Below, piece after piece: positions 3,814 through 64,000 of a DNA stretch of 64,000 nt (positions are counted from its first letter, which is position 1; every line of letters begins with the position of its first letter). The position numbers and the translations under genes are program-made. Under the pieces are notes generated by a model. The model did no database searches, was not told the DNA's origin, and saw only the letters and a program-made list of their open reading frames with translations. The DNA comes from Dimorphilus gyrociliatus (lineage: Eukaryota; Animalia; Annelida), in assembly GCA_904063045.1 (NCBI GenBank), contig CAJFCJ010000027.1, positions 598,882 to 662,881 on the forward strand. The letters run 5' to 3'.

Positions 3814-5514
3814 AATTGTTAATCTATAGGTAATCGATAAAAATAAATTATATGCTTGTTTTTAACTGTCTCATAATTCAGCACGAATAATGTTCAGATA
3901 ATTATGCCAACTACGAAAATTACTATCATTATGAAGATACGCGTACGTGCGAACTCATATTTTTGCTTATTTGTTATCATTTGAATATAAGATTTTCTTT
4001 ATTCGTATAAACATACATACTAATACACTTTATATAGATATTCATATATATATATATATATATTTTTTGTATCTATATAGACTTTTCATAAAAGTGTATA
4101 AATTATATAGTTATACAATGATGTGGGTTGGAAGGAAAAGGAAACATATACGACGGAGATAAGAGAAAAAGGAAAAAGGTATAGAGATGATGAGAAGAGA
4201 AAGTTATCTTCCAAGAAATCTAATATTATCAAAAAAGAATGATGTAAAAGTATTCTTTTAGCATTTTATTAATTAATTCATTTATCTAATTTATGCTAAA
4301 AGGATATTTCGTATGCCAAATAACGCCTTTGAATTAAGCGTATATTGTAATTTTCTAATTACATCGAAAGATGGCGCCGTCGAGTTTAAGATATATTTCA
4401 ATCCAACTTCAATCGTCTGGAAAAAAACTGGCCTACACAGTAATACTGTTGGCCGTGTATCGGCCATTTTTAAATCGTTTTTATCTCACGACACCATATC
4501 GACTGATAGCAAGATGCGATAAGGAAAGAAGCCAGAAAAAAAGGAGTATAATTTAGTAAACAGAGAGGAATACTGGTAAGTAGATCGATTATTGTTCTTT
4601 TGCTTTTTCCTACGGAAACAAAATATATTGAAAACCTTCTTTTATGATAAATTTTTCTCTCTGTATTTTTTGTTCTTTCCTTTTTTTCTTTCCTGTAAAA
4701 GAAAGAAACAATAGGGACGTCATTTATTGAAAAAAAATAATGAAATTTCTAAGTAATTTATTATGTCCTTATGAAATATTTTAGATATTCAATGTTTACT
4801 TAAAATTCGTATTCCTATTTTAAAGTATGTTATATACGAGATATATAATATATCAGCTATATATTCAAATATGTACTTCTAAGTGTAGCTTGTACAATAG
4901 AATTTCTTATACAGAATATACTGTATGCTTATGATTTGTTTGTTTATTTAAATAAATACAAACAATAGTTGTCAACAAATAACTGCCGTTATTTGGTACA
5001 TTAGGGTTAACTTTTTATGTACGATTTTTACGCTTTTGATTATGGTATACTGTATATATATAGTTTATATATGAGTTCTATACTTATATCTATACAGTAT
5101 ATACTAATATATATTACATTTTATCACATATCATTTCATATTTATGTTATGTCATATTGTATTTAAATAAATATGCTTACTATTCTATAAACCCATTATA
5201 CAAGAATCTACGAGAGATTTATGAAGCGTTTCTAGTCATAAGGAATGTCTTAGATAATGATAAAAGTGTAAAATATGGAAAAGTAGATCACTTTTAATCA
5301 TTTTCTACACCTTTTTCATATGTAACGTCATATATAGTTTAGAGATTTCACAGTTGCCTAATCTAGATCATATTTAGTAGGATACTGTCTACAAATGGGT
5401 ACTGCTAAAATTTATTATTACAATCATGCATGCATAACAACTATGGAGCATAGTATAAAAAAGATTATAAATGAAAACCAGGTGTTCACACTTCCGACTT
5501 AGAGAGCACCAAAA

Positions 5515-42200: not shown

Positions 42201-44126
42201 GAAGATATTAAGTAAACAAAAGAGAATTGAAGTCTCTGCAATGTAAGTCTTATAATTTACCTGTTAATTTCACTATAAACATTAATTACCCATATTTTGC
42301 TTTTTTGAATCTTTAGATCTGACGTATGTGACGATGATATTCCCAGTGATATTTATGACTTTACAGGCTTATTTCATTGGTGCGAAGAGGTTCCCTTTGA
42401 AAAAGCTTTATGGGTAAGTAGTTGTAAAAAGAAGTCATACTAATTTCATTAAAATTCTAATTTAAATATTTATTAAGAAAAGATCTAATCTCAACTTTCG
42501 AGATATAAAAGGTCATATAGTTGTTTGCGTCTTTGGTGGTAATGATTCAAATACAATAGGGTTATGCAATTTTGTGATGCCCTTAAGGAATAGTACATTC
42601 TTGAGGAAAGATTTAAAAAGTATTGTATTTGTTGGAGATGAAAACTTTTTAAGGAAAGAATGGGCTACCTTAAAAAATTTTCCTAAGCTTTATGTAAAAC
42701 CGGTAATGTTAATTATTTAAATTTATTCATAGTTTAACTATTGAAGTACACATTTGGAAAACATAATTACAGGGCTCTCCGTTGCATCGATCTAACCTAA
42801 GGGCAATAAAAGTGAATTCGTGTAGTATGTGCGTAATACTGAAAACAGATAAAACAGTTGAAGATATGATTCTGGCTGATAAAGAAACTATTATATGTAC
42901 CCTGGGTATAAAGTCAATGAAATTCTACAAATGGGCCGACCTGTGGAAGACTAAAGGCAATGATTTGCATATGACTGGTATAAGAGGTAATAACACCCAT
43001 TATACAAGTATTTATCATATATATTAATCAATTATTCTTTTATAGAAAGTATTGCCTCTTTAGAATCTACCCAAACAAATGAATCTGATATAAGCGAAGA
43101 TATAGATTCAAATGATACTGATCTTGAAACTAAATTAACTAGAATATTCATATTAGAAAGGTTTAAGAGCACGGAAGACAAGAAAGATATTCAGAATAAA
43201 AGTCTATATTATATATATATATATATATATATGCAGTAAAATATGAAAATCATATATTTAATAATTCTTTTATCTTCTTTAGAATCTATACATCAATTAG
43301 AATTTTCTGGATCTCATATACCTCTTATAACCGATTTAGGTTGGGAATAAAAAATATGGGAGATATACTTTCTCTTAAAATATTTCATCTCTTTCCTCCA
43401 TTTTTCTTTACCTGTTTTCATTTCAGAATACGATTCAAATGTACGATTTTTAGATTTGGATAATTTTCAAGATCCTAATTTACCATTTAGACTATCATTA
43501 CCTTTCGCTTGTGGTAGTGTTTTTACATCATCGTTACTTGATTCGTTGATATGCGCGGTAAATATTGCTATTTTATTACATTTAATTGCTGTGCGAGGTA
43601 CATGATCCACAATAGACTCTATCTTTTACAGACATATTTCAATCCTGACGCCATGAATATAATTAAAATCCTATTAACTGGCGCAGTCAAACCGGAATTG
43701 GACCAAATGATGGCCGAAGGTATTGGAATTGTAAAAGGAGCTGATAACATCCCATTACAATCTACCAGAAATCGATGCCGTGTTAATCAAATTGCGATGA
43801 CAGAAGCTCTTCTCTATTCATTCATTGGCCAAACTTATGAGAAGATGTTTTGCTCCTTACTCAATAACAAATTTATAATATGCTTGGGATTGTATAGAAA
43901 GTTAAATATACTTGACAAATGCGGATCATACGAACGATTTGTCATCACAAATCCACCTAAATCCTTAACCCTACATCCAAATGATTTAGTAAGATTTTCT
44001 TAAAATTGTAATTGGTTTTCTTACATTTTCTTTTTAATTATTATTTTTAAGGTTTATTGTTTAGTTCCGTTTGAAAAATCAAACGATTCTTTCGACTTCG
44101 ATACTAGTGAAGAGACAGTTAGTTAA
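39233..44126 (+). CDS. slo: Slo-family (BK/KCNMA1-like) potassium channel alpha subunit, divergent paralog
   Basis: 19 exons reconstructed (39233-39574 ... 44052-44126). S0 [19 protein letters not shown], pore [12 protein letters not shown]1 HIVIVG and [32 protein letters not shown]2 GHIVVC and NFVMPLR, PFACG and FVITNPP. Confidence 0.95.
43210..43232. repeat. (TA)n microsatellite in Slo intron
   Basis: Direct reading. Confidence 0.85.
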
Positions 44127-44497: not shown

Positions 44498-47400
44498 TTA
44501 ATATAAATAGAATATAACAAATGTTAAAAAGAAAAGATTTGAAGGTAGTTTTCTATTCGCTTCTGATCCTAACATATTTGCTGGAGGTAAAATTGCTACA
44601 TTGCAGTATGATTCTGGACAGCACATGTAACAATTTTCTTCTTCTAACCTATTCCACAATTCGATTACTGTATCAGAGTGAGGTTCCATATCTTCTTGTG
44701 TTACATCTGGTCGATCGCTATTAGGAGAGATAAAAACAATAGATTTTATGTCATACAATATCACTTTATATAAAGCTTACTTGTTTACTGTATCAATAAG
44801 ATATTTGCTTAAATGTGTACATAAATCCGACTGTTTCTGCGTACATTCAGCCTTTTTAGCGCATCCTTTCTCAAAGTTATATACTCCATCTTTCTTTCCA
44901 AGTCTATAGATACAAGCAGTTTCAGTTGCTTGGCAAGCCACTGGTACTCCTCTACATTTGAATATATCATTAATATTTGTAACAGTGTGTTTACAAATAG
45001 AGCAGTACATTTCTGTAAAAAGCGTAATTAAATTCATTTTTAGTAGATATAGTATAAAAAGAATTAAATGAAAAAGAAACCTTCACATTTTCTATTTGAA
45101 CAAAATTTGTGCTCGTAATTTAAAAATTCTCGCTTTATTGTACTAGAACCATTAGCATTATTGACAGAATCATCTTTAAGAGTACATAATCGCTCTCTTG
45201 TTTGAATTCCCATTCCACAGTCCTTATCACATTCACTCCATAGTCCAAATTCTCCGCAAGTTTTTGTTAAAGAACATTTTTCAATTTGACACGTTTCTAT
45301 AACATAACCGTTACCTATACAATCGCCTCCGCCCCATTGAGGAGGTGGGCTGTCGCATAGTCTTTGTTTAATTCTTATTCCAGGGCCACAAGTCTTGTCA
45401 CAGGTAGACCAAGCGCTCCATCGACCCCATTTTCCGTTTACAGCTTCGCCACATTCTCTATCTTTACACACCTCGACTATTTCATTAGCTCCTTCGCAAT
45501 CTTTACCATTTATAGGCGTTGGATTATCGCACTTTCTAGTTTTTGTTCTAAGGCCCTTACTACATGTTGAACTGCATGGAGACCAAGCTGACCACAATCC
45601 CCAGTTACCATCTCTAACTGAACAAGCCCCCTCCTCACATAATTGAACTTCGTTCACATTACCCTCACAAGCCTTACCTCCATTCAATGGTAAAGGATTA
45701 TTGCATAAACGTGATCTCGTTTTCACTCCTGTACCACAAGGAACTGAACAAAGTGACCATCCGTTCCACCCACTCCACTGCCCATCACTTATAACTAAAT
45801 TAAACAATACCTTCACAAAATCTTTTTGGTTTTATATAATTCACTTACTTAAGTCACATTTAAATCCGGTGAAGGGCAACTTGCACAGGCATTTATAACT
45901 CCCTATATTGTTTACGCACTCTCCGTTATTCAAACATGGTTCTTCTTCACATTCATCTTTATCAAATTCACAACTAGTACCCTTAAAACCACTCGGGCAT
46001 AAACAGTCTCGACTACCAGGTACTTTCTCAGTGCACACTCCACCATTAAGACAGGGATTGATCATACACTCTTTAATTTCTACATTTAGATACTTAAATA
46101 TAAGTAAATATACAGTATATACAGTCTATGTGTATGTATATCTTATTATGAAAAATTTGAAAATACCTCTCTCACAAACTATTCCAGAATAACCTGATAA
46201 GCATACACAAGTCCAAGAATTGATACCATCTACACATTCACCTCCATTCTTGCACTCTACGCTAAAGCAATCGTCGATGTCTTTAAGAAAAAGGTGTTTT
46301 CTTAATTTTAAATCAGCTATTTCTTAATGTTTGATAAAATTAAATAAAGACAAACTTTCTGCGCAATCTTTTCCTGTAAAACCTATTGCGCATTCGCAAG
46401 TATATGAATTGGCTCCATCTAGGCATGTACCTTGATTTCTACACGGTTTTCCAGCACAATCATCAAGATCTAGAGGAAAATAAAATATCTTTAATCCGTA
46501 TAAAAAGTATTTTAATATATCATTGCTTAATTATACCTAATTCACAGCGCTTTCCTTGAAATCCTGGAGGACAGGCACAAACATAATCGTCAATATTAAA
46601 TTCCTGGCATGTACCGCCATATAAGCAAGGATCACTTTGACATTCCGAAAAGTCTGTAGTAGCAAAAGTAATTTGTTTAATTATTCATATTTGATGAAAA
46701 TAGATATATATTACCTTCATCACAGTTCTTTCCTGTCCAACCACTTTCACAAAAACACTTATAATCTCCAATATAGTGAGTACAGTTGATGGCATTTACG
46801 CACGGATTCGATAAGCATTCATCGTAATCTGAACAAATTAATAGTTAAACTAACAACATTATAACCTATAACTTTTACCGCTTTGACAACGAGATCCAAA
46901 ATATCCAGATGTACATTCACACTGAAAAGCATTAACCATATCAATGCAGGATGCATCATTGAGGCAAGGATCTGATGCACAGTCATCTATATCTAACAAT
47001 TAACATTGATTTTAGTTCGATAATTGAGGTAATTTATGAACAATTTACTAATTTCGCATTGTTTTCCTGCATATCCCGGATTGCAAGAACACGTATAATC
47101 GTTAACTCCATCCTGACATGATATAAATCTATTCAATACACAAGGTTGACTTGCACAATCATCGATATCATTATCGCAATTCATCCCATCATAACCAGCA
47201 AAACAGACACATCTATAAGCATAACTTTCATCAAAACAATCTCCGTTTACACAAGGATTTGAAGCACATTCATTTATGTCAGCAATTAACACACTATTTT
47301 CACAAGTAAGCGCAGAAACGACATAATTAGCTTTCTCAGATGAGCTTCCCATATCTCCTCCTCTAACTTCCCTAAGTGGTATGAGCGTCTTGTCTGTAAA

Positions 47401-49486
47401 CTCTCTACTATCTTTATGCCATGTTCCTGCATTGGAATCACATTTGCATTCGCCATCACTATCACAATTATCGGAGAGAATACAAAGCGGACATCCACCT
47501 TGAAACAATGGAGCTGTCAATCTATGGACAGAAAAATCATAAAAACTTAGAAACCAATCTCTAGCAGTAACTCTATAACAATTAAATTCAAAATATTGTT
47601 TGCATAGATGTGAAGAATTCTTTAGAGCTTCTATTTGACGATTAGAAAACGGTGTGTATAGAATTGCTCTTTTATATCCTGCTGTTGGTTCAATATTTGT
47701 TTTCCCAGCATCTATCGGATCTACTCCTATATTTGGTATCATTTTAGTAATAGTCACATTTTCATTAACGAATTCACAATAAACTTCTCCGGCAGTGTCG
47801 CATACTTTGACATAGTACTCTCGATTTAGGGTCAAGCCAGTATTCAAATCGATAATATCGTTAATGACGTCATGAAAAAAGCATGTTCTTGTATCTGAAT
47901 ACCAGCTAATGGAGGTACAATTTGCAGTTGACAAACAAAGATCCCCACATTCTTTTTCATTAGTGAATTGTAATGTATATAAAGATGTAATATTATCATT
48001 TTGAGCTAAACCGCTAAGTACTTGTTCCATACGACAGGGTTCAGCAGTTTCTACCAAAGTTAATTTATATAAAGCATTCGTAGTAAATCCCACAGACTTC
48101 AAGTGAAGACAGGTTGTAGATTCACCATTTTCACAGAACTCTCCTGTATAAATACCTTGACTATCACATTCGCAAGTATATTTGGCAACGCCAGGTCCGA
48201 TAAACCGTGTATTCGTGCAATTGCCACCATTCTTACAAGGAATACTAGCACAGTAGTCTGTGGGAATATTACACAGGGAACCGGTGAAATCTGGTGTGCA
48301 AGAGCAGTCAAATGATCCAGTTAATCCATCTCCAGAACAGGTTGCGTTATTGAAACAAGGATTAACTCTACATGGATCAGAATCTGTTCAAATGAATACA
48401 AGAGATGTATATCATGCTTTATTTCTATTATTTCTCTTTATAAGATGGTCAATTTTAAAATAATTATACACTTACAATAACAACCACCAATTTCTAACTT
48501 TATACATATTCTATTACTCCATTCTAAAGGGATAAGTCGTAAATATCTACCAAATTCGTTCAGTGGATGTGCTTTGAACTTAGTCGGCGAAGAAGGGCCA
48601 GCATAGTCAGCTTGACTAGAGTCTATCCATGTCACTTTGTCAAAGCTGAATTGTAATTTGTATTTTGTAACATAGTCAGATGATGCAGGAAGTGCTTTTG
48701 CAGCAATACCAACAATGGCTTTTTCTTCAAGTAAATCTATTTCTAACCACTGGTCTGTATCTGATATATTTGCACACCAAGCAAATGCCTTAGTTAACTT
48801 AGCAAAATTTGGTGAATAGGTAGTCCCTCCTTCCACTGCTGAAGTAGAAGCCGTAAACGCTACATCTGATAAAGTTGCAAGAAGATGATCTTGACATGTA
48901 TATTTCAAACCTTTACAATATGGTATATTGGATCCACAACCGTACCAATAATCGAAATAATCATCCTCATAGCACCAAGGATAGTCATATGCATCCGGGT
49001 TTCTACAATAATTTGACGCGTCTCTCACATTGTCTTCTGGAAATCGATTTGCTTCATAACCTGAATGTTCCCAATAATAACAAGGATAATCGTCATCGTC
49101 CAAATAACTATTGCCACCATATCCATCAGCAGCTTCGTTCAGTTTACAATCCTCTAATATACAGTAGCCCCACTTGTTGTCGTCTGCTAAATCTTCAACT
49201 ACGCCACACCAAGGTGCAGACTGACCACTAGTCTGACAACCGAAATAGAGATCGTTTCCTTCATGAAAAGGAAATTGACAATTAGCATCATTCCCAGTAG
49301 CAAGAGATATAAGAAAGGTGTTGGGACCATTGTCCGTGTCTACTCCGCTATGAGTTCTAACATGCGAATCTAAAAATGAAATGTAGAGAAGAAATGTTTA
49401 AAAAATATATAGAAATAGAAAATGAAGAGACCTCCAGCTAGTATATTTTCTATTAGAATTATTAAAACGAATTTCACTAGCAACAT
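44498..49486 (-). CDS. Mosaic extracellular protein: signal-FN2-kringle-F5/8C-EGF2-PAN-like-Caspr/COLFI-like-EGF9-TSP1x4-Ly6-like-GPI signal, about 1400 aa
   Basis: Exons 49486-49432, 49369-48476, 48383-47049, 46992-46879, 46828-46715, 46653-46537, 46469-46356, 46280-46167, 46079-45849, 45794-45081, 45012-44781 and 44717-44498 splice in frame. CQFPFH..Y.GC..PWCG (FN2), [15 protein letters not shown] (kringle), QWLEIDL..RYLRLIP (F5/8), WSxWSxC repeats (TSP1), CCPESYCN plus a hydrophobic C-terminus. Confidence 0.9.
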
Positions 49487-49860: not shown

Positions 49861-51226
49861 CGATGAGTACATCGCCTAAATTTGTCAGCGAGCCAAATTA
49901 TCGTTACGCTTATATAATTTTAAAACCAACTGACTTTTACCCGTTATCATTTCTTTGTGTACGTGTATTACTCATAATTACTGCTATATTTACTAGTATA
50001 TACCTCAAATCTTTAACGCGTATATTGGTAAAGTCGGTGAAAATAGCTTTAACCTTCACTCGCTACTCATTCATCGACTACATATATATATATATATACT
50101 TTGTAACTAACAAGTCTCATTTAAAAGTTAAATTAAAGCTGACATAGAAAACTAATAACTAACAAAGTTCCCTGAATGAATATCATCAGAAAGTATATAA
50201 TCATTGACAGGTTTTAATTGAAAATACTATAAGACTGCTTAAGCAAGTACAAACATCCGATAATAATATTATGAATCATCAATTTCATTTTAATAATTAA
50301 ATAGGTTGCACAAATTGACCTGGATTAAAGCCAAAATAATAAACTCCGCTTGTCGGATGTAACATCTAGCAATTGTAACATTTAGATTAGAAACATCTTA
50401 TAACATTAGAAATCTGCTCTTCCAGGACGGAGAAGAAGCAGGGATGGCAAAAAGGACCAAGGGAAAGAGTTTGATATGCAGTATGTATACAAATCGAAAG
50501 GAAAGTTTATCCAGTTATATGTTTCATAAATTCTAGGCACAATCTCTCTCATTCTTCAGTTCTTTTCTCTCTCTTTCTCTCTCTTTCTCCCTTCCCCTAT
50601 GGATAGTTATTTAGATCAATATTTTTTACTTTTAATTTATATCCAGATTTTCGTTTCAAAAACAACATCTGCTTTTTTTTCTCTCTCTCTTAGAAGACTC
50701 TTAAAACTATTAAATGTTTCTATCTATATCTATATATTCAGCATATACTAATTATACATATTTTGACTGATATTAACAAGTTTTTAACAAAATAATTGAA
50801 ATGAATTGAATAAATGTTCAAGTTACTATTATGCAAATTAAAGACAGATTAACTAGATTTCAAAGTTTAAGTACCATTGGTCGCTAATTATTAAGAGATT
50901 ATTTACCTAATATACAACTATATTACTAAACTACTGGGAAGAGATGCTTCCAACTTCCAAATAATTTATTTATTTATCATATTTCTCTGAAAAATGAATA
51001 TAATACACTTATTAGATCTTTGTTTTTAATAGTTTCCGGTTAAAAATACTTTGGGCATTTGATATAAAAGTATAACAATACGAATAATTTTGTCTCCAGA
51101 TGGCGCGTTAGATCAAATACACTAATACAATCCATTGAGCATTCTACCAGGCCAAATCTATATGGCAGAGCCGTTCAAAAGAATTTAACCCAAAAATTGA
51201 TTAATCAGGCAATATACGAAATATCC

Positions 51227-52240
51227 ATGGCAGCTGATGAAAAAGGAATATTTAAATGGTTCTTAGTAGCTGCATCGTTTATTGTTCAATCAATAGCTAC
51301 TTCAATTGTTTATTCCTATGGAATTTTCTACATAGAATATTTGAAAAAGTTTGAATGGAACCATTTAAGAATTTCTTGTATAGGTGCCATGCTCATGTCG
51401 TCTGCTGTTTTAGGCGGTAAGTTTTTACCATTGAAAGATCTAGCAGAAGAGAACGATTTTCTTTCGTTAATAGAAACTATATGCATTTAAATTCTGATTT
51501 TAATTACTTGAAAGTAATGTACGAATAGAATTCAAAAGTAGCTAAAGCCATAGCAATAGTATCAATAAAGCAATAAATATCATATTAAACAATCAACTAA
51601 AGCGTATAAAAGACGTCAAATATTTCATTTATTATCTGTGCTCTAAACAATTTTTTTTCCCCCAACATTGTCCTATTCTACTATTTTGAACAAAGGATTA
51701 TTGGTGTAGCTTAAAGTAGACAAAGCAAATAATTATACTTTATCAATTTCATGAACAGAAAAACAAATCATTTTCTATGAGGTCAGCTATTTCTATTCTA
51801 AATACTTGAAAATAAAACTTTCTCACCTTGAAATATTCTATTGCGTAATACATAACAGAATAATTATAATAATGATATACTATAACAAAACCATACAATT
51901 AATATAAAAATTGCTTTGAAAGACTAACAATCTATACAATATATATGATATAACGATAATTATATGTTACATCATCATTATTCAATTTTGTACCAATTTC
52001 TTTTCTGTTCTAATATTCTCTTTATATAGAAAAAAGCTACACATACTCACTAAAACACAACCAAAAGGAAAGAAAAAATGTAGCATTATAGATAATAACA
52101 GTATTTTGTAAAATTTGTACAGAGATTTCATGGGAAAAAAAAAGAAAAGGGAAAATCCTTTAGAACTAATTAAGCTAGGCCTAAGTCTAAATACAATGCT
52201 GTTTATTTCAAGTTTATATGTTAATATTAAATATACATAT

Positions 52241-52275
<35 letters not shown>

Positions 52276-55123
52276 TGTATCTGTATATAAATGCTACACT
52301 AGTATAATTAAATAACAAAAAACGAAAGCATTTAAGTTGATTTGTACTTACGGCAAATAATCAAGATAAAGTTGCAAGTACATCTACCGACAGCGCTTAA
52401 ATTAGCCTATACTAGTCCAAACTGCCCTTTTATCTCTAAGAACTTTATTTTTAGATAGGAGTCATCTGATTATTTATTCATTCTATTTGAATTTTGCATT
52501 ACATAGGATGAAAATTTCGATTATCTTGGTTTATATATTTTCTTCGCTAGAGAACCTGGATAATATTGATGAAATATTTCCATATATAGCTTAGAAAAGG
52601 TATAAATTCACTCTTATGGTTAGTTTTCAGAGAGCTTAAAGCTTAAATGAATAAGATATACAAGTTAAATTGATAGACAGATAGATAGAAAGATAGACAC
52701 AGTATACACATAGACAGCGTTCATAAAAAAGATAGTAGCAAGAGCAAAACTGCCGAGAGTAAGCTGGCAGATTGCAAAAGAGAAAAAAAAACACATCAGA
52801 AATATATAACAGATATAAACAACATGGAAAATGTATATCTATGGTGTTCAAATCAGCTGTGTTGAAAAATATTAATTTTTTATTTAGGCCTGCATCAAAA
52901 AAAAAAATAGACTAATATTAATTAGCTAATGTATTTTTATAATATTAGTAATAATATTCTTATGTTAAACGATTATAAAGAGTTAATAACATGCAAGTAA
53001 TATAAAATAAATTATTTGAATAAATTAAAATAATGAATGTAAATATACTTTTCTTTCTAAGAATAAAGTAAGACTGTATTTAATATACGTATACTGTATA
53101 TATATATGTATATATACATTGTTTTTACAATCTAATATAGAGGAAAAATAAATATAATGCAAACTATAATCTGCTAATAATATTACTAATGCAGCACAGC
53201 TGTTATTTTAATATTAAAGGAAGATTACAAGCATCTTTATACTTATTTTTGAGGTAAAACAAGAAAAACATATAATCTTTTTCTATATAAATCATAAATA
53301 GAATAGTAGTATATAAAAGTAAATGTATACATACAGTAATAGACTAATAGATACATATATATATATAGGTCACATTAAATTTATAATTGAATTATAATAT
53401 TTCAATACTTTTTTGCTATACATAAAAAAGCATATACAGATAGGTGAGGCGAAGTTGATATTTGTCTATCATTAGCTAGATAATTAATTTCTATACTAAT
53501 TGTATTATGCCTAAAACCTTAAATATGCTTCTGAATTAATCATTTGTGTCATAAAAAGAGCATAAATTATATAACATAATATATATATATAGTATGTATA
53601 TATATAAACTATATGATATATACACATATATAATTTTCTATATATACTGTATATATATATATAAATTATTTAAATGCATTGCAGTATTGGTCATTTAAAT
53701 TGATCTCTTTTCCATCATTTATATAACTTATCGATAAAGAAAATTTGTTAAAGGTTAATTAGTCTATGTAAAGTTAACTAATTAATTCCAACAGGATTAC
53801 CAGCCTGCGTACTAATTAATAAATTGGGATGCAGATTAACTGTTTTATCTGGTGCATTGGTTTCGGCAATTCCTTTTGCCCTTTCGAATTTCTTATTGGA
53901 GAATTTTTATTATATTCTCTGTATAAGGGGAATGGTCCTAGGTGAGAAAAATTGATGAAATTATCAATAATAATCAATATTACGAGTTTTAAATGTATAG
54001 TTATTAAATATAATTATCTAACGGGCTTATTCTTTTTTCAGGATTGGGTCTTGGCTTGACTATTCTACCTTCTATTCTTATTGTACATGTCTATTTCGAA
54101 AAGAGTAAAACACTTGCTCTTTCTCTAATAATCAGCGGATCAAGCTTGGGATTAGCAATAGTTCCTTATGCTATTCTTAGATTGAAAGAGCACAGTACTA
54201 TTATTAATAATTATTCATTAATGGGTATATGTCTGCTGATGGTACCTTGCAGTTTATTTATGACTGAAAAAGGTAAAACTACATTAAAACTAACGAGAGG
54301 AATGATGGATCTTTTCGATCCAATGCTAATACATCATCAAGCGTTTTTGGTTCTGGTCGCTTGTAATTTTATATGGAGTCTGGGATCCTCTATCTTTTTC
54401 ATGTATCTGCCAGTTCAGGGATATTTAACCGGAAATGGATTAAATCGTAGCGTGTACATAATAATCGCTATTTCTATAACAATTTTCATCATCAAACCAA
54501 TGTTAACTATATTTAACCAGGCTGCAACTTTTGATCATGGTACAGCTTTTGTCTTTACAATTGTACTACCAGTTTTATTTACAACATTCTGTGGCGAAGC
54601 CAGCGTGTCGTACACTGGACAAATGGGTTACTCAATACTATTTGGAATACATGTAGCATTTTGGACTACGTACACCAGGTCAGCTAGCCAAGAGTTAATT
54701 GGTCAAGAGAACCTGGCTCTAGGCAAGGGCTTTATAATAACAAGCATCGGACTTGGTCTACTTGTTGGGCCAATATTTGCTGGTCTTTTATTAGATATGC
54801 TTAAAACAACATATTATGTCTTTTATCTCTCAGGAATGGCACTGATTTTAGCAGGTGTCATAATGCTTATTGCTAAATTAACAGGTTGTACGAATGTTTA
54901 TAGTGACAAAAAAGTAGATATAAGCGAAACAATAGCATTTGTCGATAATGCAAGCTCTACTAATTCAACTCCCACCGAGAGTATTACCTATAACGACCCA
55001 TTGGAGAGCGCTTTGTACGAAATTATGGTGTCAGGTTCAACAGTTCAGGCAAGAAGGGCAATAGCAACTTTACACATTGATTCAAAAAGAACGGATTCAA
55101 GCTTTAAAATAACAAAAGCTTAA
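51227..55123 (+). CDS. SLC16 / monocarboxylate-transporter-like MFS protein
   Basis: Exons 51227-51416, 53795-53941 and 54042-55123. KWFLVAASF, NKLGCRLTVLSG, GLGLGLTILPSILIVHVYFEK, GLLVGPIFAGLLLD and about 12 TM helices. The frame is open upstream to 51101, so a further 5' exon (ATG 50476) is possible. Confidence 0.92.
52245..52274. repeat. (TA)n microsatellite ending in TACTGTA
   Basis: Direct reading. Confidence 0.85.
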
Positions 55124-56477
55124 TTTATTTATAGTAAAGACACAATATGTTTGTAGAATTATAAACAAAATTTTTGGCCTATTTTGTTGAAATTACCAAT
55201 TAGCATTAATCTATTATAATTTGTCTTTAAAAGCAACAACAACCAACAAAATATAAACATTTTTCACTTTTTTTCTCATACAAAAGGTTCCACTTTGTTT
55301 TACAACCGAAATTTCTAACCTATATGTATTTATATGTTATTTTGACGTCATATTTATATATGTTATTTACTTAAAAAAGGAAATGTTTTATCCAAAAGAA
55401 AAGTTAAACGAAGGAAACTTAACATAAACAAAACAAAAATAAATAACAATGGGAAAAGAGTTGAATTTGTGCCCATAAAGAAATTATTTATTACACAATT
55501 TGAAAAATCTGCAGATTTTATCCAAAAAAAGGAGTTAAACATTAAACTATCGAGTTTTGGAATGAAGTGATAAATAACTGCCACTCTTTTATTTAATAAT
55601 TCTAGTCTTTCAACTATTTGTAAAATTTTTTTTTAGACTTTCCAGTAAAATTCTATACTCTTTACGGCTTTAGAATAATGTATATCATTATGTATTTTAA
55701 CTAACGATATATGATCTTTTCAATAATAACATGTTCTCCGTTTCTGTATATAGATATATATTTTTATAAAATTTTATTTATCAATAAATGACTTAGTGTT
55801 TTAAAAAACTTTTATAACCTTCTTTTTTCAAACCGGAAGTATTGTCGATAAAAATTAATTCCCGATTCTTCAGATAAGCTTTCTTTATTATAAATTCGAA
55901 TATTCAATATTTTAATAAAAGTGTCTTCATTCGTTTGAAAGAAACTATTTTTCCGAATAATTAACTTTCAACCACTTTCTTCAATTACTTCAAATACCTA
56001 AAAAACATATTCAGTATTTCCGTTACGTTAAAATAGTTTCTCAGCACTTTTCTCCTATAAATCAATAGAAAAACCATACCACAAACAGAGAAAATAACAA
56101 TTAATAATAAACGCCGTACAATTAACATTACATATGAAAAATTTCTGAAAATTCAAAAGTCAACTTTCGTATAAGAACCACATTAGTTCAATCCTGATTA
56201 AAAACTACAAAAATGAAACAGTTACCCAGCAAAAAGTACTAATACATAATTGCCAAATGTTAATATCCGTCTAAAATTAAAATAAAAAAAAACAGATTGA
56301 TATACATTATAGGAAAGGCGATTTTGCAACGTAGATAACAAATAAAGAAATCTCTAACATCAATCAGAAAGAATATAAGAAACAGGTGAAACTCATTGAA
56401 AATAACACGTCAACTATTAAAATCAATGTGAAAAACCTGGAAAACTAAACTAACATTTAAAGCAAATAAGTGAAGAG

Positions 56478-56486
56478 TATATAAAG
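56478..56486 (+). promoter_or_regulatory. Candidate TATA box of the giant secreted protein gene
   Basis: TATATAAAG about 190 nt upstream of ATG 56673, with a plausible 5'-UTR intron (GTAAG 56569 to AG 56638) between them. Confidence 0.35.
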
Positions 56487-56672
56487 CAATTCATCCACAT
56501 ACTCAATGTCTATTGACCAGCAGAGTCACATAACCAAAAGATACTTCTAGTTCAGTAACAAATTATTGGTAAGAATTTACAAAAAAACTATTCGGATAAC
56601 AAAATCATACAAACTTTTAATAACTTTATCATTAGCAGGTTTTAACTACTAATAAATATCTCAGCTAGAAAT

Positions 56673-59600
56673 ATGTTGCCGATACCTCGGCTTTGCCTTA
56701 TCTTGCTCTTAGCAGCAACAGCTGGAGCTCTTATATTGAAAAGTCCAACAGACTCTGAAACGGTTGGACGCTCTATCCTGAAAAAAACCATTAGACCAAC
56801 AAAATATTACAAGACATTTGAATCGAAAACTTACTTCAGAAATGGAACAAATAAATATTTGATCCAAAAAGCTAAAGATGGTAGATACTTCTATAAAATC
56901 GGAAGTAGAACCTTCTATGTTAATTACTGGAAATACTCTACCAGTAAGAAAACAACACAGAAGCGTTTTGTTTCTTATAGAAGGTAAAGTAATGCCTCTC
57001 TTCCATATCCCATTATTCCCTTTATCGAGTGAAACCTTCAATGATTTCCTCTCATTCCTATACTTCATCTTTCACAGATACTACATCTACGGGGGAAAAC
57101 GTTACCTTCTACAAAAAGAAGGAAGTAGATGGTTCTTCAGAATTGGAGCTCTCAAGAGATACGTTTCTTTTGGTAACAGAAAAGTCACCTATACAAAGAA
57201 AACAATCATCAAACGCTCCAGTTACAAGAGATACATCAGAATTGGTGGTAAGAAATACGAACTCCGCAAATCAAAGAGCGGCCGTTATTATTACATCATC
57301 AACGGAAAAGCCATCTACTTGAACAGACGTGGAAAGACTACTGGTGCCAGTATCAGATACATTATGATCGGTGGCGTCAGATACCGTCTATACAAAAATG
57401 GCTTGAAATACTACATTTTGAAAAACAACAAAAAGGTTTGGTACACTTCTTCTCAGATCTCATCAATGATGAAGAGCAGCGTCAAATATCTCTACTACGG
57501 AGGTATGAAATTTCAATTACGCCTGGAGGGAAGTCGCTATTACTTCATTTACGGAAAGAGCAAACGCAAGGTTTACGTAGACAAAAATATGAAACCAATC
57601 GGTCTCGGAAGCAAAACGTTAGTAAAATCATTCCACCCAACCCTTTCAAAACATAACCACGACAATTCATTACAAACCATTCTCTTCCTACAGTTATCTT
57701 TTGGGAAGCAAATACAGATACACATTAAATAGAGGAAGCGGAAGATCTTACTACTTCTACAGAGGAGGAAGAAAATACTACACAAGAAACAGAGCCTGTG
57801 TTGCCCAAAGAAGAGCTACACCTACACTCAGAATTGGTGGAAAATCATTCTCCCTCACACGTTCCGGAAGTCATTGGATCTTTTACTTTGCAAAGAAGAC
57901 ATACCGTCTCATGAGGTAAATACAATTTGTCACCTTACTGTTTCAATCACCTAACAAATTCAAATAGTCCGCTATACCTATAACCTCTATTTGAACAGAA
58001 CAACTACTCCAAACACATATAAATTGAACTTTAACGGTAAAAACTACCAAGTCAAACTTTCTTTCGGCGGTCTTACAACACCACCAAGAACATCAATCAG
58101 AACCGCATCATTGAGAATCAATGGCAAGAGTTTCTCTTTGAGACCATCAGGATCAAACTACTATTTCCAATATGGAAAGAAACGTATTAATGTCATCCGT
58201 GATGTTAAACAAAAGGGAAGATTCTACTTCACACTCAACGGCAAGAAGACGTCATTCAACCTCTTCAGTAGCATCGGAACCATGAGCAGCTACCTCAAAA
58301 AGATGGTCATGATCAACAATGTCAAATACCCAATTCAAAAGAAATTCGGCATGTCCTATTACATGTTGAATGGAAAGAAGGTTGTTTACAATTCTTGCAA
58401 TAGATATTCCATTCCAAGATGCAGCAGAGGATCAAAATTGGTGAAAGGGAAATGCGTCGATATTGACGAATGTAAAACTAAACCATGCAAACATGGAGCT
58501 AAATGTGTTAACCAAAGAGGAGGATACAGATGCGCTTGTCCACAAGGAACAGTGTATGACTCACAAGATGGATGTCAAAAGATCCCCGATTTAGGTGAAG
58601 GATGTGCTTCCAAATCAGATATTGTCTTCGTCATGGATTCTTCCGGATCTGTTGGATCTCACAATTTTGAAAAAATGAAGAGATTTGTCTACAACATTGC
58701 TTCTAAATTCACTATTGGAAAAAACGCCATGCGTGTTTCCGTCGTCAAATACCAATCAAGAACCTACTTGGAATTCAACTTGGACAAACACTCCAGCAAG
58801 AAATCTCTCTTGGATAACATTTTGAGAATCAGATACAGAGGAGGTGGTACTGCCACTGACAGAGCCTTGAAATTCACTCGTATGACTGTATTGCCAAAAA
58901 GCAGAAAGAACACTCCAACAATCGTTGTTGTAATCACTGATGGAAGATCAAACAACCGCCGCAGAACAATCCAAGAAGCTGATGTGAGTTTTCGGAACAC
59001 TTCATAGACATTAGCATTAATATATATTTCTATCGTTATATGTTTTACAGAAAATCCTTAAGGACAAATCCGTCAAATTGATTTCTGTTGGAATCGGACA
59101 CAACTTGGATGCTGGAGAATTGAAAGCCATGGCTTCCGAACCAACAGCAAAGCATTCTTTCGCCGCCAGCGACTTCAATGCTTTGGGTGGTATCTATTTG
59201 TCTCTTGCTTCAAGAGCCTGTCAATCTGCATGTCCATCCGGCAAGAAATGCATCAAATGCAGACCAGGATATTACGAATCTGATGGAAAATGCTGTAAGT
59301 GTTATAATTGAAGGTCATAGAGAGAGTCACATTGCGATCGATTCACAAACACTACTTGACAAAAATCAATACATACTTTTTCTCTTCACACAGATTACGA
59401 TGCTTGCTTCAAAGCCGGACGTTGTAGAGGAAATGCTAAGTGTTCGAACAGAAAGAGCAGCTTCGTTTGCGCTTGTCCAGCTGGATTTGTCTACACACGT
59501 AACGGATGTGCTAAACCAAAAATCCCAAGTGGTGACAGAATCATTCTCTTCGATGATGGAGACTGTAAAGGAAAACAAAAGACATTCTACTCTGCTTCCT

Positions 59601-62600
59601 CCAACCTCGGTCCTTTCGATAACACTGCCGAGTCAGTTATGGTCAGTGGAAAGAAAATCTGGTTGTTGTACAACGGCAAATACTTCAGACACTTCTCCTA
59701 TGCCGCCCGCGCCGGAAACTGTATCAATTTGTCTTCAAGAACAAAGGTCAGCTCTTTGAGACCATATTACGGTCTAACAATCAGATGTCCAAGAGGATAC
59801 AAGAGAGAAAACAACAAATGTATCGACATCAATGAATGCGAAGACAAAGACATTTGTGTCGAAGGATCGAAATGTATCAATTATGGTGGTGGATACAGAT
59901 GCTCTTGCCCAATCGGAAACGTGTATGACAAGAGAAAGGGTTGTATTGCTGTTCCAGACATGGGAGATGGATGCGGCGCTGAAGCCGATATCCTTTTCGT
60001 TTTGGACGCTTCTGGATCTGTCAGAGCTCATAACTTTGAAGAAGTCAAGAAATTCACAGCCGAAGTTGTAAACAAAATGAAGATTGGAAAGAAAGATGTT
60101 CGTGTTGGTTTGATGACATTCGCATCTTCCGTTAGAAATAGATTCTCCTTTGCCAAGTACACAAACAAACAGAGCCTTGTTAAGGCCATCTTGAGCACAC
60201 CATACACAAGAGGAGGAACCAACACAGCTGCCGCTCTCACTTCTGCTAAGAGAGCGTTCGCTTCAGCAAGAAAGAATGTACCACACATTGCTATTGTTGT
60301 CACAGATGGAAGATCTTACAATAAGAGACTCACGTTGGCTGCTGCTAATTCACTTAAAACTGCAAAGGTAACAACATTTGCTGTTGGTGTTGGAAAGAGA
60401 TTGGACAAAGATGAATTGAAGGCCATTGCTTCCAAACCATTCGACAGTCATTTATTGGAAATTGAAGATTTCGAAGATTTGGTCAAAATTCAACCTAAAC
60501 TTGCCGTCAAGACATGCGAACGTAAGTAGAATATAGTAGGAGCAGGTTATTTTGTATTTGCAATAAAATTCATTAATAACCTTTACAGAATCCTGCAAAA
60601 AGAACTCCTGTTTCACCTGCAAAAAGGGATTCATCAAGAGAGAAAAGGAATGCTTCAGAGACTACTGTTCTATCAACAACATTTGCAAGGGTGGAGCCAC
60701 TTGTGAACTCACAGAAAAATTCTACGAATGCAAATGTCCACGACGAGGAATGGAATACGACAGACTCAAGGGATGTGTTGCTTCTTCGTTGGATGACGAT
60801 GATGATGCTGACGATGATGACAAAGAGGAAGATCCAAAGGAAGGAGTCGTTTTCTACTCTGAAGAAAACTTCAAGGGAAAACGTTGCGTTGTCAAGGACG
60901 ATGTACCAGATTTGTCCCAAATCGGATGTGATAACACTGCCGAATCCGCTATCGTGTTTGGTGGCAAGAGATGGCAACTCTATGATGACGACAAATATGA
61001 AGACGAATTGGTCATCTTGAAGCAAGGAAAATACCCAACTTTGAAGAGATACGGTGCTGATGACAAAGTTTCATCTATCAGAGATCTCCCAGAAGACGTT
61101 GACAATTGTAAACCAAACCCATGCAAAACAGGAGCAACATGCGCCGATCTCGCCAATGGTTTCAAATGTACCTGCAAAGATGATGATTTCGAATACGATG
61201 AAGCCAAAGGCTGTGTACGAAAGATAGTGAAAGAGCCAAGAGAAGGTATCATTTTGTACGATGAAGAAAACTTCAAGGGAGATTTCATCGTCGTTGAAAA
61301 GGATACTCCAGAATTATCTGAATTGAAATTTGGAGATAGAGTCGAATCATTGAAAGTTATTGGCAAGAAACATGGGAATTGTACGACAAGGGAGGATATG
61401 TTGATCCCATTGCCCGTTTCCCACCAGGAGAATACGACGTAATCAAACCAGGAAACAAGGCCAGTTCTCTCAGAGTTGCACCAAAGACATCTGACTGTAA
61501 GTAGACCATTAAAGGATTTACAAATAATCCACAATGAACATATCATTATCACTTGCATCTTTGTAACAGTGCCAATTATTGTGCCAAGAACCCATGTAAA
61601 CGTGGAGCTAGATGTTTCGGTTTGAAGAAGGGATACCGTTGCATTTGTCCATCTGGACAAAAATACTATAGAACAAAGGGATGTCAAAAACTTTTGACCA
61701 GCCCATGTGACAGCAACCCATGTAGAAAGCCAGCTAGATGTTTCCGTCGTGGTTTGACTAGATACAGATGTGTATGCAAGAGAAGTCAATATTATAGCGC
61801 AAAGGCTGGATGTGTGTCCAGACCTTGTGCCAGAAAACCATGTGGAAAAGCAAGATGTATCAACATCGGTTCACGTCATAGATGTGTTTGTCCACAAGAA
61901 GCATCTTTGATGCTAAAACCAAATCTTGCAAGAGATCTGCTACACAATTGTGCAAGAGAATTCTTGCAAAGGAAAGGCTAGATGTGTATCTCTCGGCAGA
62001 AGAATCAGATGTCAATGTGGAAGAGGATTCAGATACAACGCCAAAAAAGGCTGTGTCAAATTCAACTTCAACCCATGCTTGAAGAAACCATGCAAGGGAG
62101 CCAGATGTATGAGAAGAGGTTTCAACGGTTATAGATGTCTTTGTAAACCAGGCTTCAGATATTATGGCAAAAAGGGATGTGTGAAATACACAAGACCAAA
62201 CCCATGCTTGAAGAGACCATGTAAGGGAGCTAAATGTCTCAGAAGAGGTATTGCTGGATATAGATGTGTCTGCAAGAAGGGACTCTTCTACAACAGAACA
62301 AAGGCTGTATCAAATACAACAAGAACCATGTTCAAAGAGACCATGCAAGGGAGCCAGATGTTTGAGAAGAGGTCTTTCTGGTTACAGATGTTTGTGCAAG
62401 AGAGGATTTAGATACAATAGCAAAAAGGGATGCGTTAAATACACAAGACCAAACCCATGTTTGAAGAAACCATGCAAGGGTGCAAGATGTATGAGAAGAG
62501 GACTCTTCGGATACAGATGTGTATGCAAGAAGGGATTCAGATACAACAGAAGAAAGGGATGTATCAAGATGACCAAACCAGTCAACTTGTGCAAGAAGAA

Positions 62601-64000
62601 CTCTTGCATAGGAAATGCTAGATGTTTGACTTTGGGTAGAAGAATCAGATGCCAATGTAAGAAGGGATTCAGATACAACGCCAAATCTGGCTGCGTTAAA
62701 TACGGAAAGAACCCATGCTTGAAGAGACCATGCAAAAAATCCAGATGCATCAGAAGAGGTATCACTGGATACAAATGTTTATGTAGACCAGGATTCATTT
62801 ATCGCGGAGCTAAAGGCTGTGTGAAATATAATCCATGTGCCAAGAACCCATGTAAGAAAACTAAATGTGTGAGAAGAGGAAGATTCGGTTACAGATGTCT
62901 CTGTAAGAGAGGATTCAGATACAACAGAAAAAGGGATGCGTTAAATACACAAGACCAAACCCATGTTTGAAGAAACCATGCAAGGGTGCAAGATGCATGA
63001 GAAGAGGCATTTTCGGATACAGATGTGTATGCAAGAAGGGATTCAGATACAACAGAAGAAAGGGATGTATCAAGATGACCAAACCAGTCAACTTGTGCAA
63101 GAAGAACTCTTGCATAGGAAATGCTAGATGTTTGACTTTGGGAGAAGAATCAGATGCCAATGTAAGAAGGGATTCAGATACAACGCCAAATCTGGCTGCG
63201 TTAAATACGGAAAGAACCCATGCTTGAAGAAACCATGCAAAGGAACAAGATGCATGAGAAGAGGACTCTTCGGTTACAGATGCGTCTGTAAGAGAGGATT
63301 CAGATACAACTCAAGAAAGGGATGTGTTAAATACAACCCATGCTTGAGAAGACCATGCAAGGGAGCTAAATGCTCACACGTGGAAAATTCGGTTACAAAT
63401 GTACTTGCAAGAAGGGATTATTCTAAATATGCCGACTTGGATGTATCAAGGGCAACCCATGTTTGAGAAGACCATGCAAAGGAAGCAAATGTGTAAGAAA
63501 AGGATTGTTTGGATACAGATGTCTTTGTAAAAAGGGATTCGTCTACAACAGAGAAGAGGTTGTATCAAATTGAACAGACGCAATCCATGTTTGAAGAGAC
63601 CATGCAAGGGAGCTAGATGTGTGAGAGAGAGGACTCTTCGGATACAGATGCTTGTGCAAGAGAGGATTCAGATACAACAGCAGAAAGGGATGTGTTAAAT
63701 AACAAACCAAACCATGTGCAAAAAGACCATGTAAGAGCGCTAGATGTGTGAGACGTGGTCCTTTCGGATTCACCTGTTTGTGTAAGAAGGGATTCTACTA
63801 TCAACCAAGAAGAGGATGCTTGAAATACGGCAAGGTCAATCCATGTGCCAAGAAGCCATGTTTGAAATCTAGATGTCAAAGAAGAGGCCGTTCTGGATAC
63901 AGATGCGTCTGCAAAAAGGGATTCTTCTACAACCGCAAGAGAGGAGTATGAAATTCAACCCCTGCCGTAGAAGACCATGCGGAAAAGTTGCCAGATGTGT
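56673..64000 (+). CDS. Giant secreted cationic protein: signal peptide, K/R/Y/G repeat region, EGF, vWA x2, beta/gamma-crystallin x3, about 20 basic EGF repeats (3'-truncated; apparent frameshifts after 61370)
   Basis: Signal MLPIPRLCLILLLAATAG. Exons 56673-56983, 57078-57617, 57694-57915, 57999-58983, 59051-59294, 59394-60521, 60589-61496 and ~61570 onward. vWA DIVFVMDSSGS and DILFVLDASGS; crystallin GVVFYSEENFKG...DDKVSSIR; NPCLKKPCKGARC repeats. Confidence 0.9.
61570..64000 (+). repeat. Coding tandem array of about 120-bp EGF-like units (about 20 copies)
   Basis: Recurring aacccatgYttgaagaRaccatgcaaggg...agatacaac...aagggatgtgtNaaatac. A near-identical block of about 300 bp occurs at 62425-62725 and 62931-63229. 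Confidence 0.92.

What the first reader, a model, noticed from the sequence alone, without database searches (positions are those of the whole stretch)
56673..64000. Candidate bioadhesive / cocoon (glue) protein with an unusual domain architecture
Seen: one spliced secreted ORF of more than 2,200 codons joining a Lys/Arg/Tyr/Gly-rich N-terminus, EGF, two vWA domains with intact MIDAS (DxSxS, GGT, TDG), three beta/gamma-crystallin domains and about 20 highly basic EGF repeats. Codon choice (TTC, TAC, AAC, ATC, GGA) differs sharply from neighbours such as the Slo gene (TTT, TAT, AAT), suggesting very high expression. Established: mussel Mfp-2 is a tandem of NPC..PC EGF repeats, Mfp-3/5 are K/Y/G-rich DOPA adhesives, and vWA domains occur in byssal matrix proteins such as PTMP1. 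Inference: these adhesive modules are fused in one polypeptide used for substrate attachment, egg cocoon or mucus. I do not recognise this combination.
Basis: partly seen in the sequence, partly recalled or inferred. Interest (0 to 1): 0.88.

Follow-up and report, generated by a model that had tools for sequence, protein, structure and literature searches.

The report
Giant polycationic secreted matrix/glue protein gene
A small marine worm makes, at what looks like a very high level, a giant secreted protein that joins a matrilin-like core to two extremely positively charged repeat arrays; it is probably a cross-linker of a secreted material such as glue, egg-cocoon jelly or mucus, but where it acts has not been tested.

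Summary
From ATG 56673 a + strand gene runs through 8 exons and off the window end, more than 2,200 codons in all. It encodes:
- a signal peptide;
- nine ~30-aa Tyr/Lys/Arg/Gly units with no known family;
- cbEGF-vWA, then EGF-βγ-crystallin-cbEGF-vWA, then EGF-βγ-crystallin-EGF-βγ-crystallin;
- at least 19 canonical but hyper-basic EGF units (K+R 31%, D+E 0.3%, net about +247).

As given, the window is not one ORF: from 61365 onward it has about 20 one-base indels. One genomic and three spliced RNA contig sets all carry the corrected bases, and a related species keeps the frames open. These are therefore long-read assembly errors, not a pseudogene.

The gene is transcribed and spliced. Its contig depth is very high in one transcriptome. 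Its codon bias is strong (TTC 75% against 24% in neighbours). It is under purifying selection (dN/dS about 0.09). No transmembrane segment is visible.

Searches found only generic vWA/EGF proteins (matrilin, collagen VI, PTMP1) plus orthologs in close relatives.

The adhesive/cocoon reading is plausible (about 50%) but untested. An internal matrix role is the main rival. The C-terminus lies outside the window.

Other first-stage notes of this scan (s1-081332, s1-081957, s1-084016) describe the same stretch.

The parts
56673..56983 (+). Exon 1: start codon, signal peptide (56673-56729) and first Tyr/Lys/Arg repeat unit (56829-56921)
   Evidence: The only hydrophobic stretch in the visible protein is at residues 1-26. 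It is conserved in L001. The X2 RNA contig reaches 1,154 nt upstream of 58001, which matches exons 1-4 plus about 79 nt of 5' UTR.
57078..57617 (+). Exon 2: four ~30-aa beta-hairpin repeat units (consensus Y-x-x-I-G-G-x-K-Y-x-L-x3-G-S-R-Y-Y-F-x2-G)
   Evidence: Alignment A2. AF2 predicts modules of four beta strands, mean pLDDT 68. No Pfam hit at E<=10. dN/dS 0.06 against L001.
57694..57915 (+). Exon 3: two more repeat units
   Evidence: GT-AG introns 57618-57693 and 57916-57998 keep the frame.
57999..58983 (+). Exon 4: last repeat units (to about 58395), calcium-binding EGF (58459-58560), first part of vWA1 with MIDAS DSSGS (58636-58650), GGGTATD (58840-58860) and TDG (58933-58950)
   Evidence: Pfam VWA 1.6e-31 and EGF_CA 9.6e-8. 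Motif coordinates.
59051..59294 (+). Exon 5: end of vWA1 plus a short Cys-rich linker (59219-59293)
   Evidence: Pfam VWA profile positions 127-171. Introns on both sides confirmed by RNA contigs of X2, X5 and X6.
59394..60521 (+). Exon 6: EGF, beta/gamma-crystallin 1 (about 59537-59776), calcium-binding EGF (59825-59920), vWA2 (59987-60493) with MIDAS DASGS, GGT and TDG
   Evidence: Pfam VWA 1.1e-43, EGF_CA 1e-9, Crystall 6.4e-5. Crystallin 1 against 2, E=7e-8. PDB matches: collagen VI alpha-3 1e-94, PTMP1 6e-26.
60589..61496 (+). Exon 7: Cys-rich linker plus EGF, acidic D/E linker (60792-60833), beta/gamma-crystallin 2 (60846-61082, with a DDKVSS Ca-site motif), EGF (61122-61178), beta/gamma-crystallin 3 (about 61248-61480). 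One missing base near 61365.
   Evidence: Pfam Crystall 1.5e-23, two stretches. PDB beta-B2/gamma-B/Ciona crystallins. L001 reads through in frame as GKKTWELYDKGGY.
61570..64000 (+). Exon 8 (cut by the window end): tandem array of at least 19 basic EGF units of about 42 aa, DNA period 129/253. Carries about 18 one-base assembly indels.
   Evidence: TRF. Pfam EGF 5.9e-19 on the clean stretch 62326-62961. Cys spacing 4/4-5/8-9/1/11. Indels corrected in all four runs. L001 is open over 7 units.

Best explanation
Shown:
- This is an intact, spliced and apparently very highly transcribed gene of a small AT-rich animal genome. Earlier notes of this scan name the animal as the annelid Dimorphilus gyrociliatus.
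- It encodes a giant protein of more than 2,200 aa with a signal peptide and no visible membrane segment.
- A matrilin-like core (cbEGF-vWA ... cbEGF-vWA, both MIDAS sites intact) is interrupted by three beta/gamma-crystallin domains and an acidic linker.
- The core is flanked by a Tyr-rich polybasic beta-hairpin repeat region (net +102) and a polybasic, disulfide-rich EGF rod (net about +247).

Inferred:
- It is secreted in bulk and acts as a cohesive cross-linker of an extracorporeal material: gland glue, the gelatinous egg cocoon, or trail mucus.
- The two cationic arms bind polyanionic glycans and surfaces electrostatically, as the KR-rich regions of flatworm Mlig-ap1 do.
- The vWA MIDAS sites make metal-dependent protein-protein links.
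- The EGF array gives a stiff, protease-resistant spacer.
- The acidic Ca-binding crystallin block may buffer charge during storage.
For: - Transcription and splicing are seen in three RNA contig sets. Word depth is 8,000-117,000 in X5 against 70 in X2.
- Strong C-ending codon bias against three neighbouring genes.
- Signal peptide and no other hydrophobic segment in 2,212 aa.
- Charge and composition.
- No R-x-K/R-R cleavage site where shuffles give 5.8 (P about 0.002), so the array is probably kept whole.
- Purifying selection over every module, dN/dS about 0.09.
- Mlig-ap1, a proven cohesive glue protein, combines extreme KR-rich regions, a von Willebrand domain and 17 EGF modules (PMC6410801).
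- Tandem EGF arrays are common in marine adhesives (PMC9382459).
- The byssal protein PTMP1 is the second-best solved match to the vWA exon.
- Dinophilid eggs are wrapped in a gelatinous cocoon (bioRxiv 10.1101/491886).
Against: - No tissue, stage or proteomic evidence was obtained.
- The tool itself calls contig depth a poor measure of expression.
- The nearest named clusters for the core are matrilins, AMACO (VWA2) and collagen VI-like proteins, which are internal matrix components.
- The transcript is present in several samples (X2-X4), so it may not be restricted to egg-laying adults.
- The C-terminus is unknown.
- The organism name comes from earlier unchecked notes. I confirmed only that it is consistent: a PacBio assembly, short introns, and two species labels for the same sequence.
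Confidence: 0.5

Rival explanations
1. It is an internal extracellular-matrix adaptor (matrilin/AMACO/collagen VI-like). It would link collagen or cuticle fibrils to polyanionic proteoglycans inside the body or in the cuticle, rather than forming a secreted glue or cocoon.
For: The nearest named clusters are an annelid EGF+vWA family (0.89), matrilin-4/-2/-1, VWA2 and collagen VI-like. Collagen VI alpha-3 is the best PDB match. The transcript is found in all listed RNA samples of the species.
Against: Extreme net charge (about +350) and hyper-basic EGF units are unknown in matrilins (my own knowledge). The very strong codon bias and very high depth in one transcriptome fit a bulk secretory product better. 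No orthologs were found outside close relatives.
Confidence: 0.3
2. It is a defensive component of mucus or cocoon. The polycationic Cys-rich units and the hairpin repeats, which structurally recall bacterial cell-wall-binding repeats, would bind and agglutinate or kill microbes. The array might act whole or after processing into cationic EGF-like peptides.
For: The best, though weak, structure matches of the N-terminal repeat are choline-binding, CROP and YG glucan-binding hairpin repeats. The charge density is like that of antimicrobial peptides.
Against: TM-scores are below 0.2 and no sequence relation was found: no Pfam hit at E<=10 and no profile hit in PDB. There are no furin-type sites and none lie between units.
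Confidence: 0.08
3. It is the ectodomain of a membrane-anchored adhesion receptor whose transmembrane and cytoplasmic parts lie beyond the window end.
For: The gene runs off the window at 64000 while still inside the EGF array. Long EGF stalks occur in receptors.
Against: The apparent expression level and codon bias are unusual for a receptor. The extreme polycation content is also unusual. No evidence either way was obtainable on the C-terminus.
Confidence: 0.07
4. It is a decaying pseudogene or an assembly artefact, given about 20 frame breaks and two in-frame stops in the window.
For: The window sequence as given is broken at 61365 and many times between 61573 and 63949.
Against: Every listed break is corrected identically in one genomic and three RNA contig sets. 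The breaks are one-base changes, most of them missing bases in short runs of one letter. The ortholog is open. dN/dS is about 0.09. The published assembly is PacBio-based (PMC7854359).
Confidence: 0.02

Closest known systems
Mlig-ap1, cohesive protein of the temporary adhesive of the flatworm Macrostomum lignano (PMC6410801)
   Same: Giant secreted protein. Extremely Lys/Arg-rich regions at both ends. A central block with a von Willebrand-type domain and a long EGF series. High Cys content.
   Different: Mlig-ap1 has low-complexity KR regions, a C-type lectin, vWD-C8-TIL and calcium-binding EGFs. Here the cationic parts are folded repeats (beta-hairpin units and non-calcium-binding EGFs), the von Willebrand domains are type A, and beta/gamma-crystallin domains are present. 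No sequence homology was shown. This is a functional analogy only.
Matrilins and AMACO (VWA2), vertebrate vWA-EGF matrix adaptors
   Same: vWA domains with MIDAS alternating with EGF modules. These are the nearest named clusters by protein-language-model features.
   Different: No crystallin domains, no polybasic arrays and no 20-unit EGF rod. The matrilin C-terminal coiled coil cannot be checked because the C-terminus is outside the window.
Mussel byssal proteins: PTMP1 (two vWA domains; PDB 4cn8) and Mfp-2 (tandem EGF)
   Same: PTMP1 matches the vWA exon at E=6e-26. Tandem EGF arrays are a recurrent feature of marine adhesives (PMC9382459).
   Different: In mussels these are separate proteins. 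Here the units are far more basic and carry few Tyr. DOPA is untested. Homology to Mfp-2 was not tested because no Mfp-2 sequence was in hand.
Beta/gamma-crystallin superfamily (lens crystallins, Ciona beta/gamma-crystallin 2bv2)
   Same: Three domains match Pfam Crystall and solved beta-B2, gamma-B and Ciona crystallins. Domain 2 has a D-D-K-V-S-S motif of the Ca-binding type.
   Different: Here they are single domains embedded between EGF modules of a giant matrix protein, with an acidic linker. I found no other protein with Crystall plus VWA among the hits examined.
Bacterial choline-binding / CROP / YG glucan-binding hairpin repeats
   Same: Short aromatic-Gly beta-hairpin repeats. They head both structure searches with the N-terminal repeat model.
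   Different: E-values are only 1e-4 to 1e-2 and TM is below 0.2. There is no Pfam or profile match. The unit is about 30 aa with two hairpins and is strongly basic. This is a shared structural class at most, not membership.

Membership tests
von Willebrand factor type A domain (MIDAS-bearing) | Pfam VWA above gathering score, and MIDAS residues DxSxS, T and D | tested here: met
   VWA 110 and 150 bits against a cutoff of 23.8. DSSGS/GGGTATD/TDG and DASGS/GGTNT/TDG are present.
Beta/gamma-crystallin | Pfam Crystall match, and similarity to solved crystallins | tested here: met
   83 bits over two domains. Beta-B2 at 5e-9 and Ciona 2bv2 at 4.7e-6. Domain 1 is below the cutoff (23.4 against 25) but matches domain 2 at E=7e-8.
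Beta/gamma-crystallin | Ca-binding motif N/D-N/D-x-I/V-S/T-S in both Greek keys | tested here: inconclusive
   DDKVSS in domain 2 fits. The other sites (DNTAES, GDRVES, GNKASS, TKVSS) fit only partly. Binding cannot be tested with these tools.
EGF-like domain | Six Cys with spacing C-x(3-7)-C-x(3-6)-C-x(8-11)-C-x-C-x(8-12)-C | tested here: met
   Array spacing is 4 / 4-5 / 8-9 / 1 / 11. Pfam EGF 68 bits on 62326-62961. The units are therefore canonical, not non-canonical.
Calcium-binding EGF (cbEGF) | N-terminal D/N-x-D/N-E/Q-C consensus | tested here: not met
   Met only by the two core modules (DIDEC, DINEC). The array units start with N-P-C or similar and lack the consensus.
Matrilin | vWA-EGF(n)-vWA order | tested here: met
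   vWA1 ... EGF/crystallin/cbEGF ... vWA2, with extra inserted domains.
Matrilin | C-terminal coiled-coil oligomerisation domain | not testable with these tools
   The gene runs off the window at 64000, and no longer contig or protein record was found.
Mfp-3/Mfp-5-type DOPA adhesive | Short, disordered, very Tyr/DOPA-rich polybasic protein | tested here: not met
   The N-terminal region is a repeat of about 9 x 30 aa predicted as beta-hairpin modules, with Y at 12%. DOPA cannot be tested with these tools.
Mfp-2-type EGF adhesive | Sequence homology to Mfp-2 beyond the generic EGF fold; DOPA in the repeats | not tested
   No Mfp-2 sequence was available by reference. A word search with the array found only one weak EGF protein (29% identity).
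Choline-binding / cell-wall-binding repeat (Pfam CW_binding_1 and relatives) | Profile match to the ~20-aa repeat | tested here: not met
   No Pfam hit at E<=10. The profile of 18 units found nothing in PDB sequences at E<=10. Only weak structural-class matches were seen.

The most novel reading that the evidence does not exclude
A single polypeptide forms a self-contained, charge-switched underwater cement. Two folded polycationic arms (a new beta-hairpin repeat family and a hyper-basic EGF rod) are held in check during storage by an acidic, Ca-binding beta/gamma-crystallin block. On secretion into seawater they condense with polyanionic glycans, while the MIDAS vWA domains lock the network. 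The N-terminal repeat would be an animal invention that converges on bacterial cell-wall-binding repeats.
Probability: 0.12. Interest if true: 0.7.

Novelty: new variant of a known kind. Interest (0 to 1): 0.45.

Why it matters
If this protein is the main cohesive component of an annelid glue or cocoon, it would be a second, independent example (after flatworm Mlig-ap1) of a giant polycation-plus-EGF-plus-von Willebrand design for wet adhesion. Here it is built from folded, disulfide-stabilised modules that could be expressed piecewise.

It also adds two things of wider interest. One is a ~30-aa basic beta-hairpin repeat with no detectable family. The other is a rare placement of beta/gamma-crystallin domains inside a matrix protein.

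On the practical side, the gene is mis-assembled in the reference, with about 20 frame breaks, so automated annotation has probably split or dropped it.

Tried and rejected
1. A greedy intron finder gave wrong long introns. I replaced it with a hand-curated model checked against RNA joints.
2. Pseudogene reading: rejected by reads and by the ortholog.
3. Word-index searches with the N-terminal repeat exon, the EGF array and the crystallin exon returned only close relatives or one weak EGF protein. These searches see only proteins 0.55-1.75 times the query length, so longer relatives could be missed.
4. The full HMMER search with the vWA exon was dominated by multi-vWA proteins. Of the six top hits I scanned, only the ortholog fragment P0007 had a crystallin domain.
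5. The protein-atlas search with the N-terminal repeat scored 0.61 or less, which is uninformative.
6. A profile of 18 repeat units against PDB sequences found nothing.
7. Polyprotein-precursor idea: there are no furin-type sites.
8. C-terminus: I could not look beyond 64000. An exact-product look-up of a window ORF found no record. Short-read contigs break inside the array.
9. The supplements of the genome paper hold no entry for crystallin or matrilin.
10. No Rfam family or tRNA lies in 55000-64000.
Full report
**What is in the sequence.** The window is AT-rich (about 28% G+C), rising to 41% over 58-64 kb. From ATG 56673 on the + strand I curated these exons: 56673-56983, 57078-57617, 57694-57915, 57999-58983, 59051-59294, 59394-60521 and 60589-61364. 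They are joined by six GT-AG introns of 67-99 nt and give 1,402 codons without a stop. The reading frame continues to 61496, across one more intron, and from about 61570 to the window end at 64000. The visible protein is therefore about 2,250 residues long and is incomplete at its C-terminus.

**Domains.** The modules run in this order:
- A signal peptide. Residues 1-26 are the only stretch with mean hydropathy above 1.5 in the 2,212 residues scanned (the 1,402-codon part plus the 810-aa array).
- Nine units of about 30 aa, consensus Y-x-x-I-G-G-x-K-Y-x-L-x3-G-S-R-Y-Y-F-x2-G. Over residues 22-495, K+R is 23%, Tyr 12%, D+E 1.9% and net charge +102.
- A calcium-binding EGF and vWA1, which is split by an intron.
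- A short Cys-rich linker, an EGF, beta/gamma-crystallin 1, a calcium-binding EGF and vWA2.
- A second Cys-rich linker plus EGF, an acidic D/E run, beta/gamma-crystallin 2, an EGF and beta/gamma-crystallin 3.
- A tandem EGF array.

Crystallin 1 is just below Pfam's cutoff but aligns with crystallin 2 at E=7e-8. Both vWA domains keep the MIDAS residues.

**The EGF array.** It has DNA periods of 129 and 253. Read with X at every break, it is 810 aa long, with 19 complete units and a twentieth just begun. The Cys spacing is canonical: 4 / 4-5 / 8-9 / 1 / 11. K+R is 31%, D+E 0.3%, Cys 14% and net charge about +247. The units lack the calcium-binding consensus. Another first-stage note calls them non-canonical; the spacing and the Pfam match say they are canonical EGF with an unusual charge.

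**The frame breaks are assembly errors.** The window is not literally one ORF. From 61365 onward there are about 20 one-base indels and two in-frame stops. Most are missing bases in short runs of one letter. I laid four public contig sets on 58001-64000. X1 is an unspliced genomic contig. X2, X5 and X6 are spliced and therefore RNA. Of the 12 indels the tool lists, seven (for example +A behind 61956, +T behind 63425, -1 at 63430 and at 63627) are carried at full depth by all four runs. The other five (for example +A behind 62927 and +C behind 63701) are missing from at least one run, or are carried by only part of the depth in X5 or X6. Nine more sites were not listed.

The related locus L001 reads straight through the 61365 site and through seven EGF units. 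The published assembly of the species named by earlier notes is PacBio-based (PMC7854359). The pseudogene reading is rejected.

**Expression and selection.**
- Splicing. RNA contigs confirm introns 58984-59050, 59295-59393, 60522-60588 and about 61497-61569. The X2 contig extends 1,154 nt upstream of 58001. That equals my exons 1-4 up to 58000 (1,075 nt) plus about 79 nt of leader, which supports the start at 56673.
- Depth. Word depth is about 70 in X2 but 8,000-117,000 in X5. The tool warns that depth is a poor measure of expression, so I take this only as a sign of very high abundance in that sample.
- Codon usage. It agrees: TTC 0.75, TAC 0.72, AAC 0.64 and ATC 0.61, against 0.11-0.35 in the Slo-like, MFS and TSP1/EGF neighbours.
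- Conservation. Against L001, amino-acid identity is 58-86% per exon, dS is about 1.5 (saturated) and dN/dS is 0.05-0.24, about 0.09 overall. This includes the new repeat and the start of the EGF array.

**Relatives.** An exhaustive HMMER search with the EGF-crystallin-EGF-vWA exon found 11,138 proteins. The top of the list is made of multi-vWA proteins. Of the six I scanned, only P0007 (85% identical, an exon of the L001 ortholog) carries a crystallin domain. Word-index searches gave:
- N-terminal repeat exon: only the ortholog fragment P0151.
- EGF array: only one weak EGF protein, 29% identical.
- Crystallin exon: only the ortholog fragment P0153.

These searches are blind to much longer or shorter proteins, so absence elsewhere is not proven.

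By protein-language-model features, the nearest named clusters are an annelid EGF+vWA family, matrilins, VWA2/AMACO and mollusc collagen VI-like proteins. Among solved structures the vWA exon matches collagen VI alpha-3 (1e-94, many domains summed), then mussel PTMP1 (6e-26), then integrin I domains.

**The N-terminal repeat.** It has no Pfam match even at E<=10. AF2 on a six-row alignment gives modules of four beta strands (two hairpins) joined by low-confidence linkers, with mean pLDDT 68 and pTM 0.32. Foldseek against PDB and AFDB clusters gives only weak matches (E 1e-4 to 1e-2, TM below 0.2). They are consistently choline-binding proteins, clostridial CROP repeats and YG glucan-binding repeats. 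A profile of 18 units finds none of these by sequence. I treat this as a shared structural class of aromatic-Gly hairpin repeats, not as membership. The repeat itself appears new.

**What it most likely does.** What is shown is a secreted-type, bulk-expressed, conserved giant protein with two folded polycationic arms around a MIDAS-vWA/EGF/crystallin core. The function is inferred. The best-characterised analogue is Mlig-ap1 of Macrostomum. Its KR-rich regions, von Willebrand domain and 17 EGF modules give cohesion, and its charge is the target of the release mechanism (PMC6410801). Tandem EGF arrays recur in glues of mussels, limpets, sea urchins, sea anemones and sea stars (PMC9382459). Dinophilid eggs are enclosed in a gelatinous cocoon, and adhesive glands are described in the family. 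R-x-K/R-R sites are completely absent where 5.8 are expected (the repeats are not independent, so the P value is rough). This suggests the array is kept intact.

I give about 50% to an extracorporeal glue/cocoon/mucus cross-linker, about 30% to an internal matrilin-like matrix role, and small shares to defence, receptor and pseudogene readings.

**Organism.** Earlier agents' notes in this scan name Dimorphilus gyrociliatus. I did not verify this independently. It fits the short introns, the PacBio-type errors, two species labels on near-identical runs from 2017 and 2020, and a 3%-divergent copy in a coral-tank metatranscriptome.

**Verdict.** This is a new variant of the known kind "modular vWA/EGF secreted matrix or adhesive protein". 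Its new features are a novel repeat, an unusual crystallin insertion and an extreme charge.

Noticed in passing
window 61365-64000: The reference carries about 20 one-base indels here, most of them missing bases in short runs of one letter. In 58001-61364 the genomic contig X1 shows at most one. Polishing seems to have failed in and near the repeat array, so gene models here are probably broken in public annotation.
   Followed up: yes
window 62201-63712: Two low-support RNA joints skip 1,510 nt and 1,384 nt inside the EGF array. Genomic depth varies between 0.24x and 1.8x of the flank. An almost identical ~180-bp segment recurs 506 bp downstream (62439-62618 and 62945-63124). The true number of EGF units may differ from the assembly or vary between individuals.
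   Followed up: partly
window 44777-49103, minus strand: A neighbouring gene encodes another secreted mosaic protein: Kringle-like, F5/8 type C (discoidin), EGF modules and four thrombospondin type 1 repeats. It has ordinary AT-rich codon usage.
   Followed up: partly
window 39233-44003 (+) and 51197-55123 (+): A Slo/BK-type potassium channel gene (Ion_trans_2, BK_channel_a, Slo-like RCK) and an MFS transporter gene lie upstream. Both have low C-ending codon use.
   Followed up: no
L001 (Logan SRR23372231) 2013-8330: A related species carries the ortholog with the same exon order and open frames. A third source (SRR31984834) has a copy that is 79% identical over the crystallin exon. The gene is therefore conserved at least among close relatives.
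   Followed up: partly
window 59219-59293 and 60515-60653: Each vWA domain is followed by a short Cys-rich linker of the form C-x2-3-C-x4-5-C-x2-C-x2-G-F/Y-x5-6-C. It has no Pfam match and recalls furin-like or TNFR-type Cys repeats.
   Followed up: no
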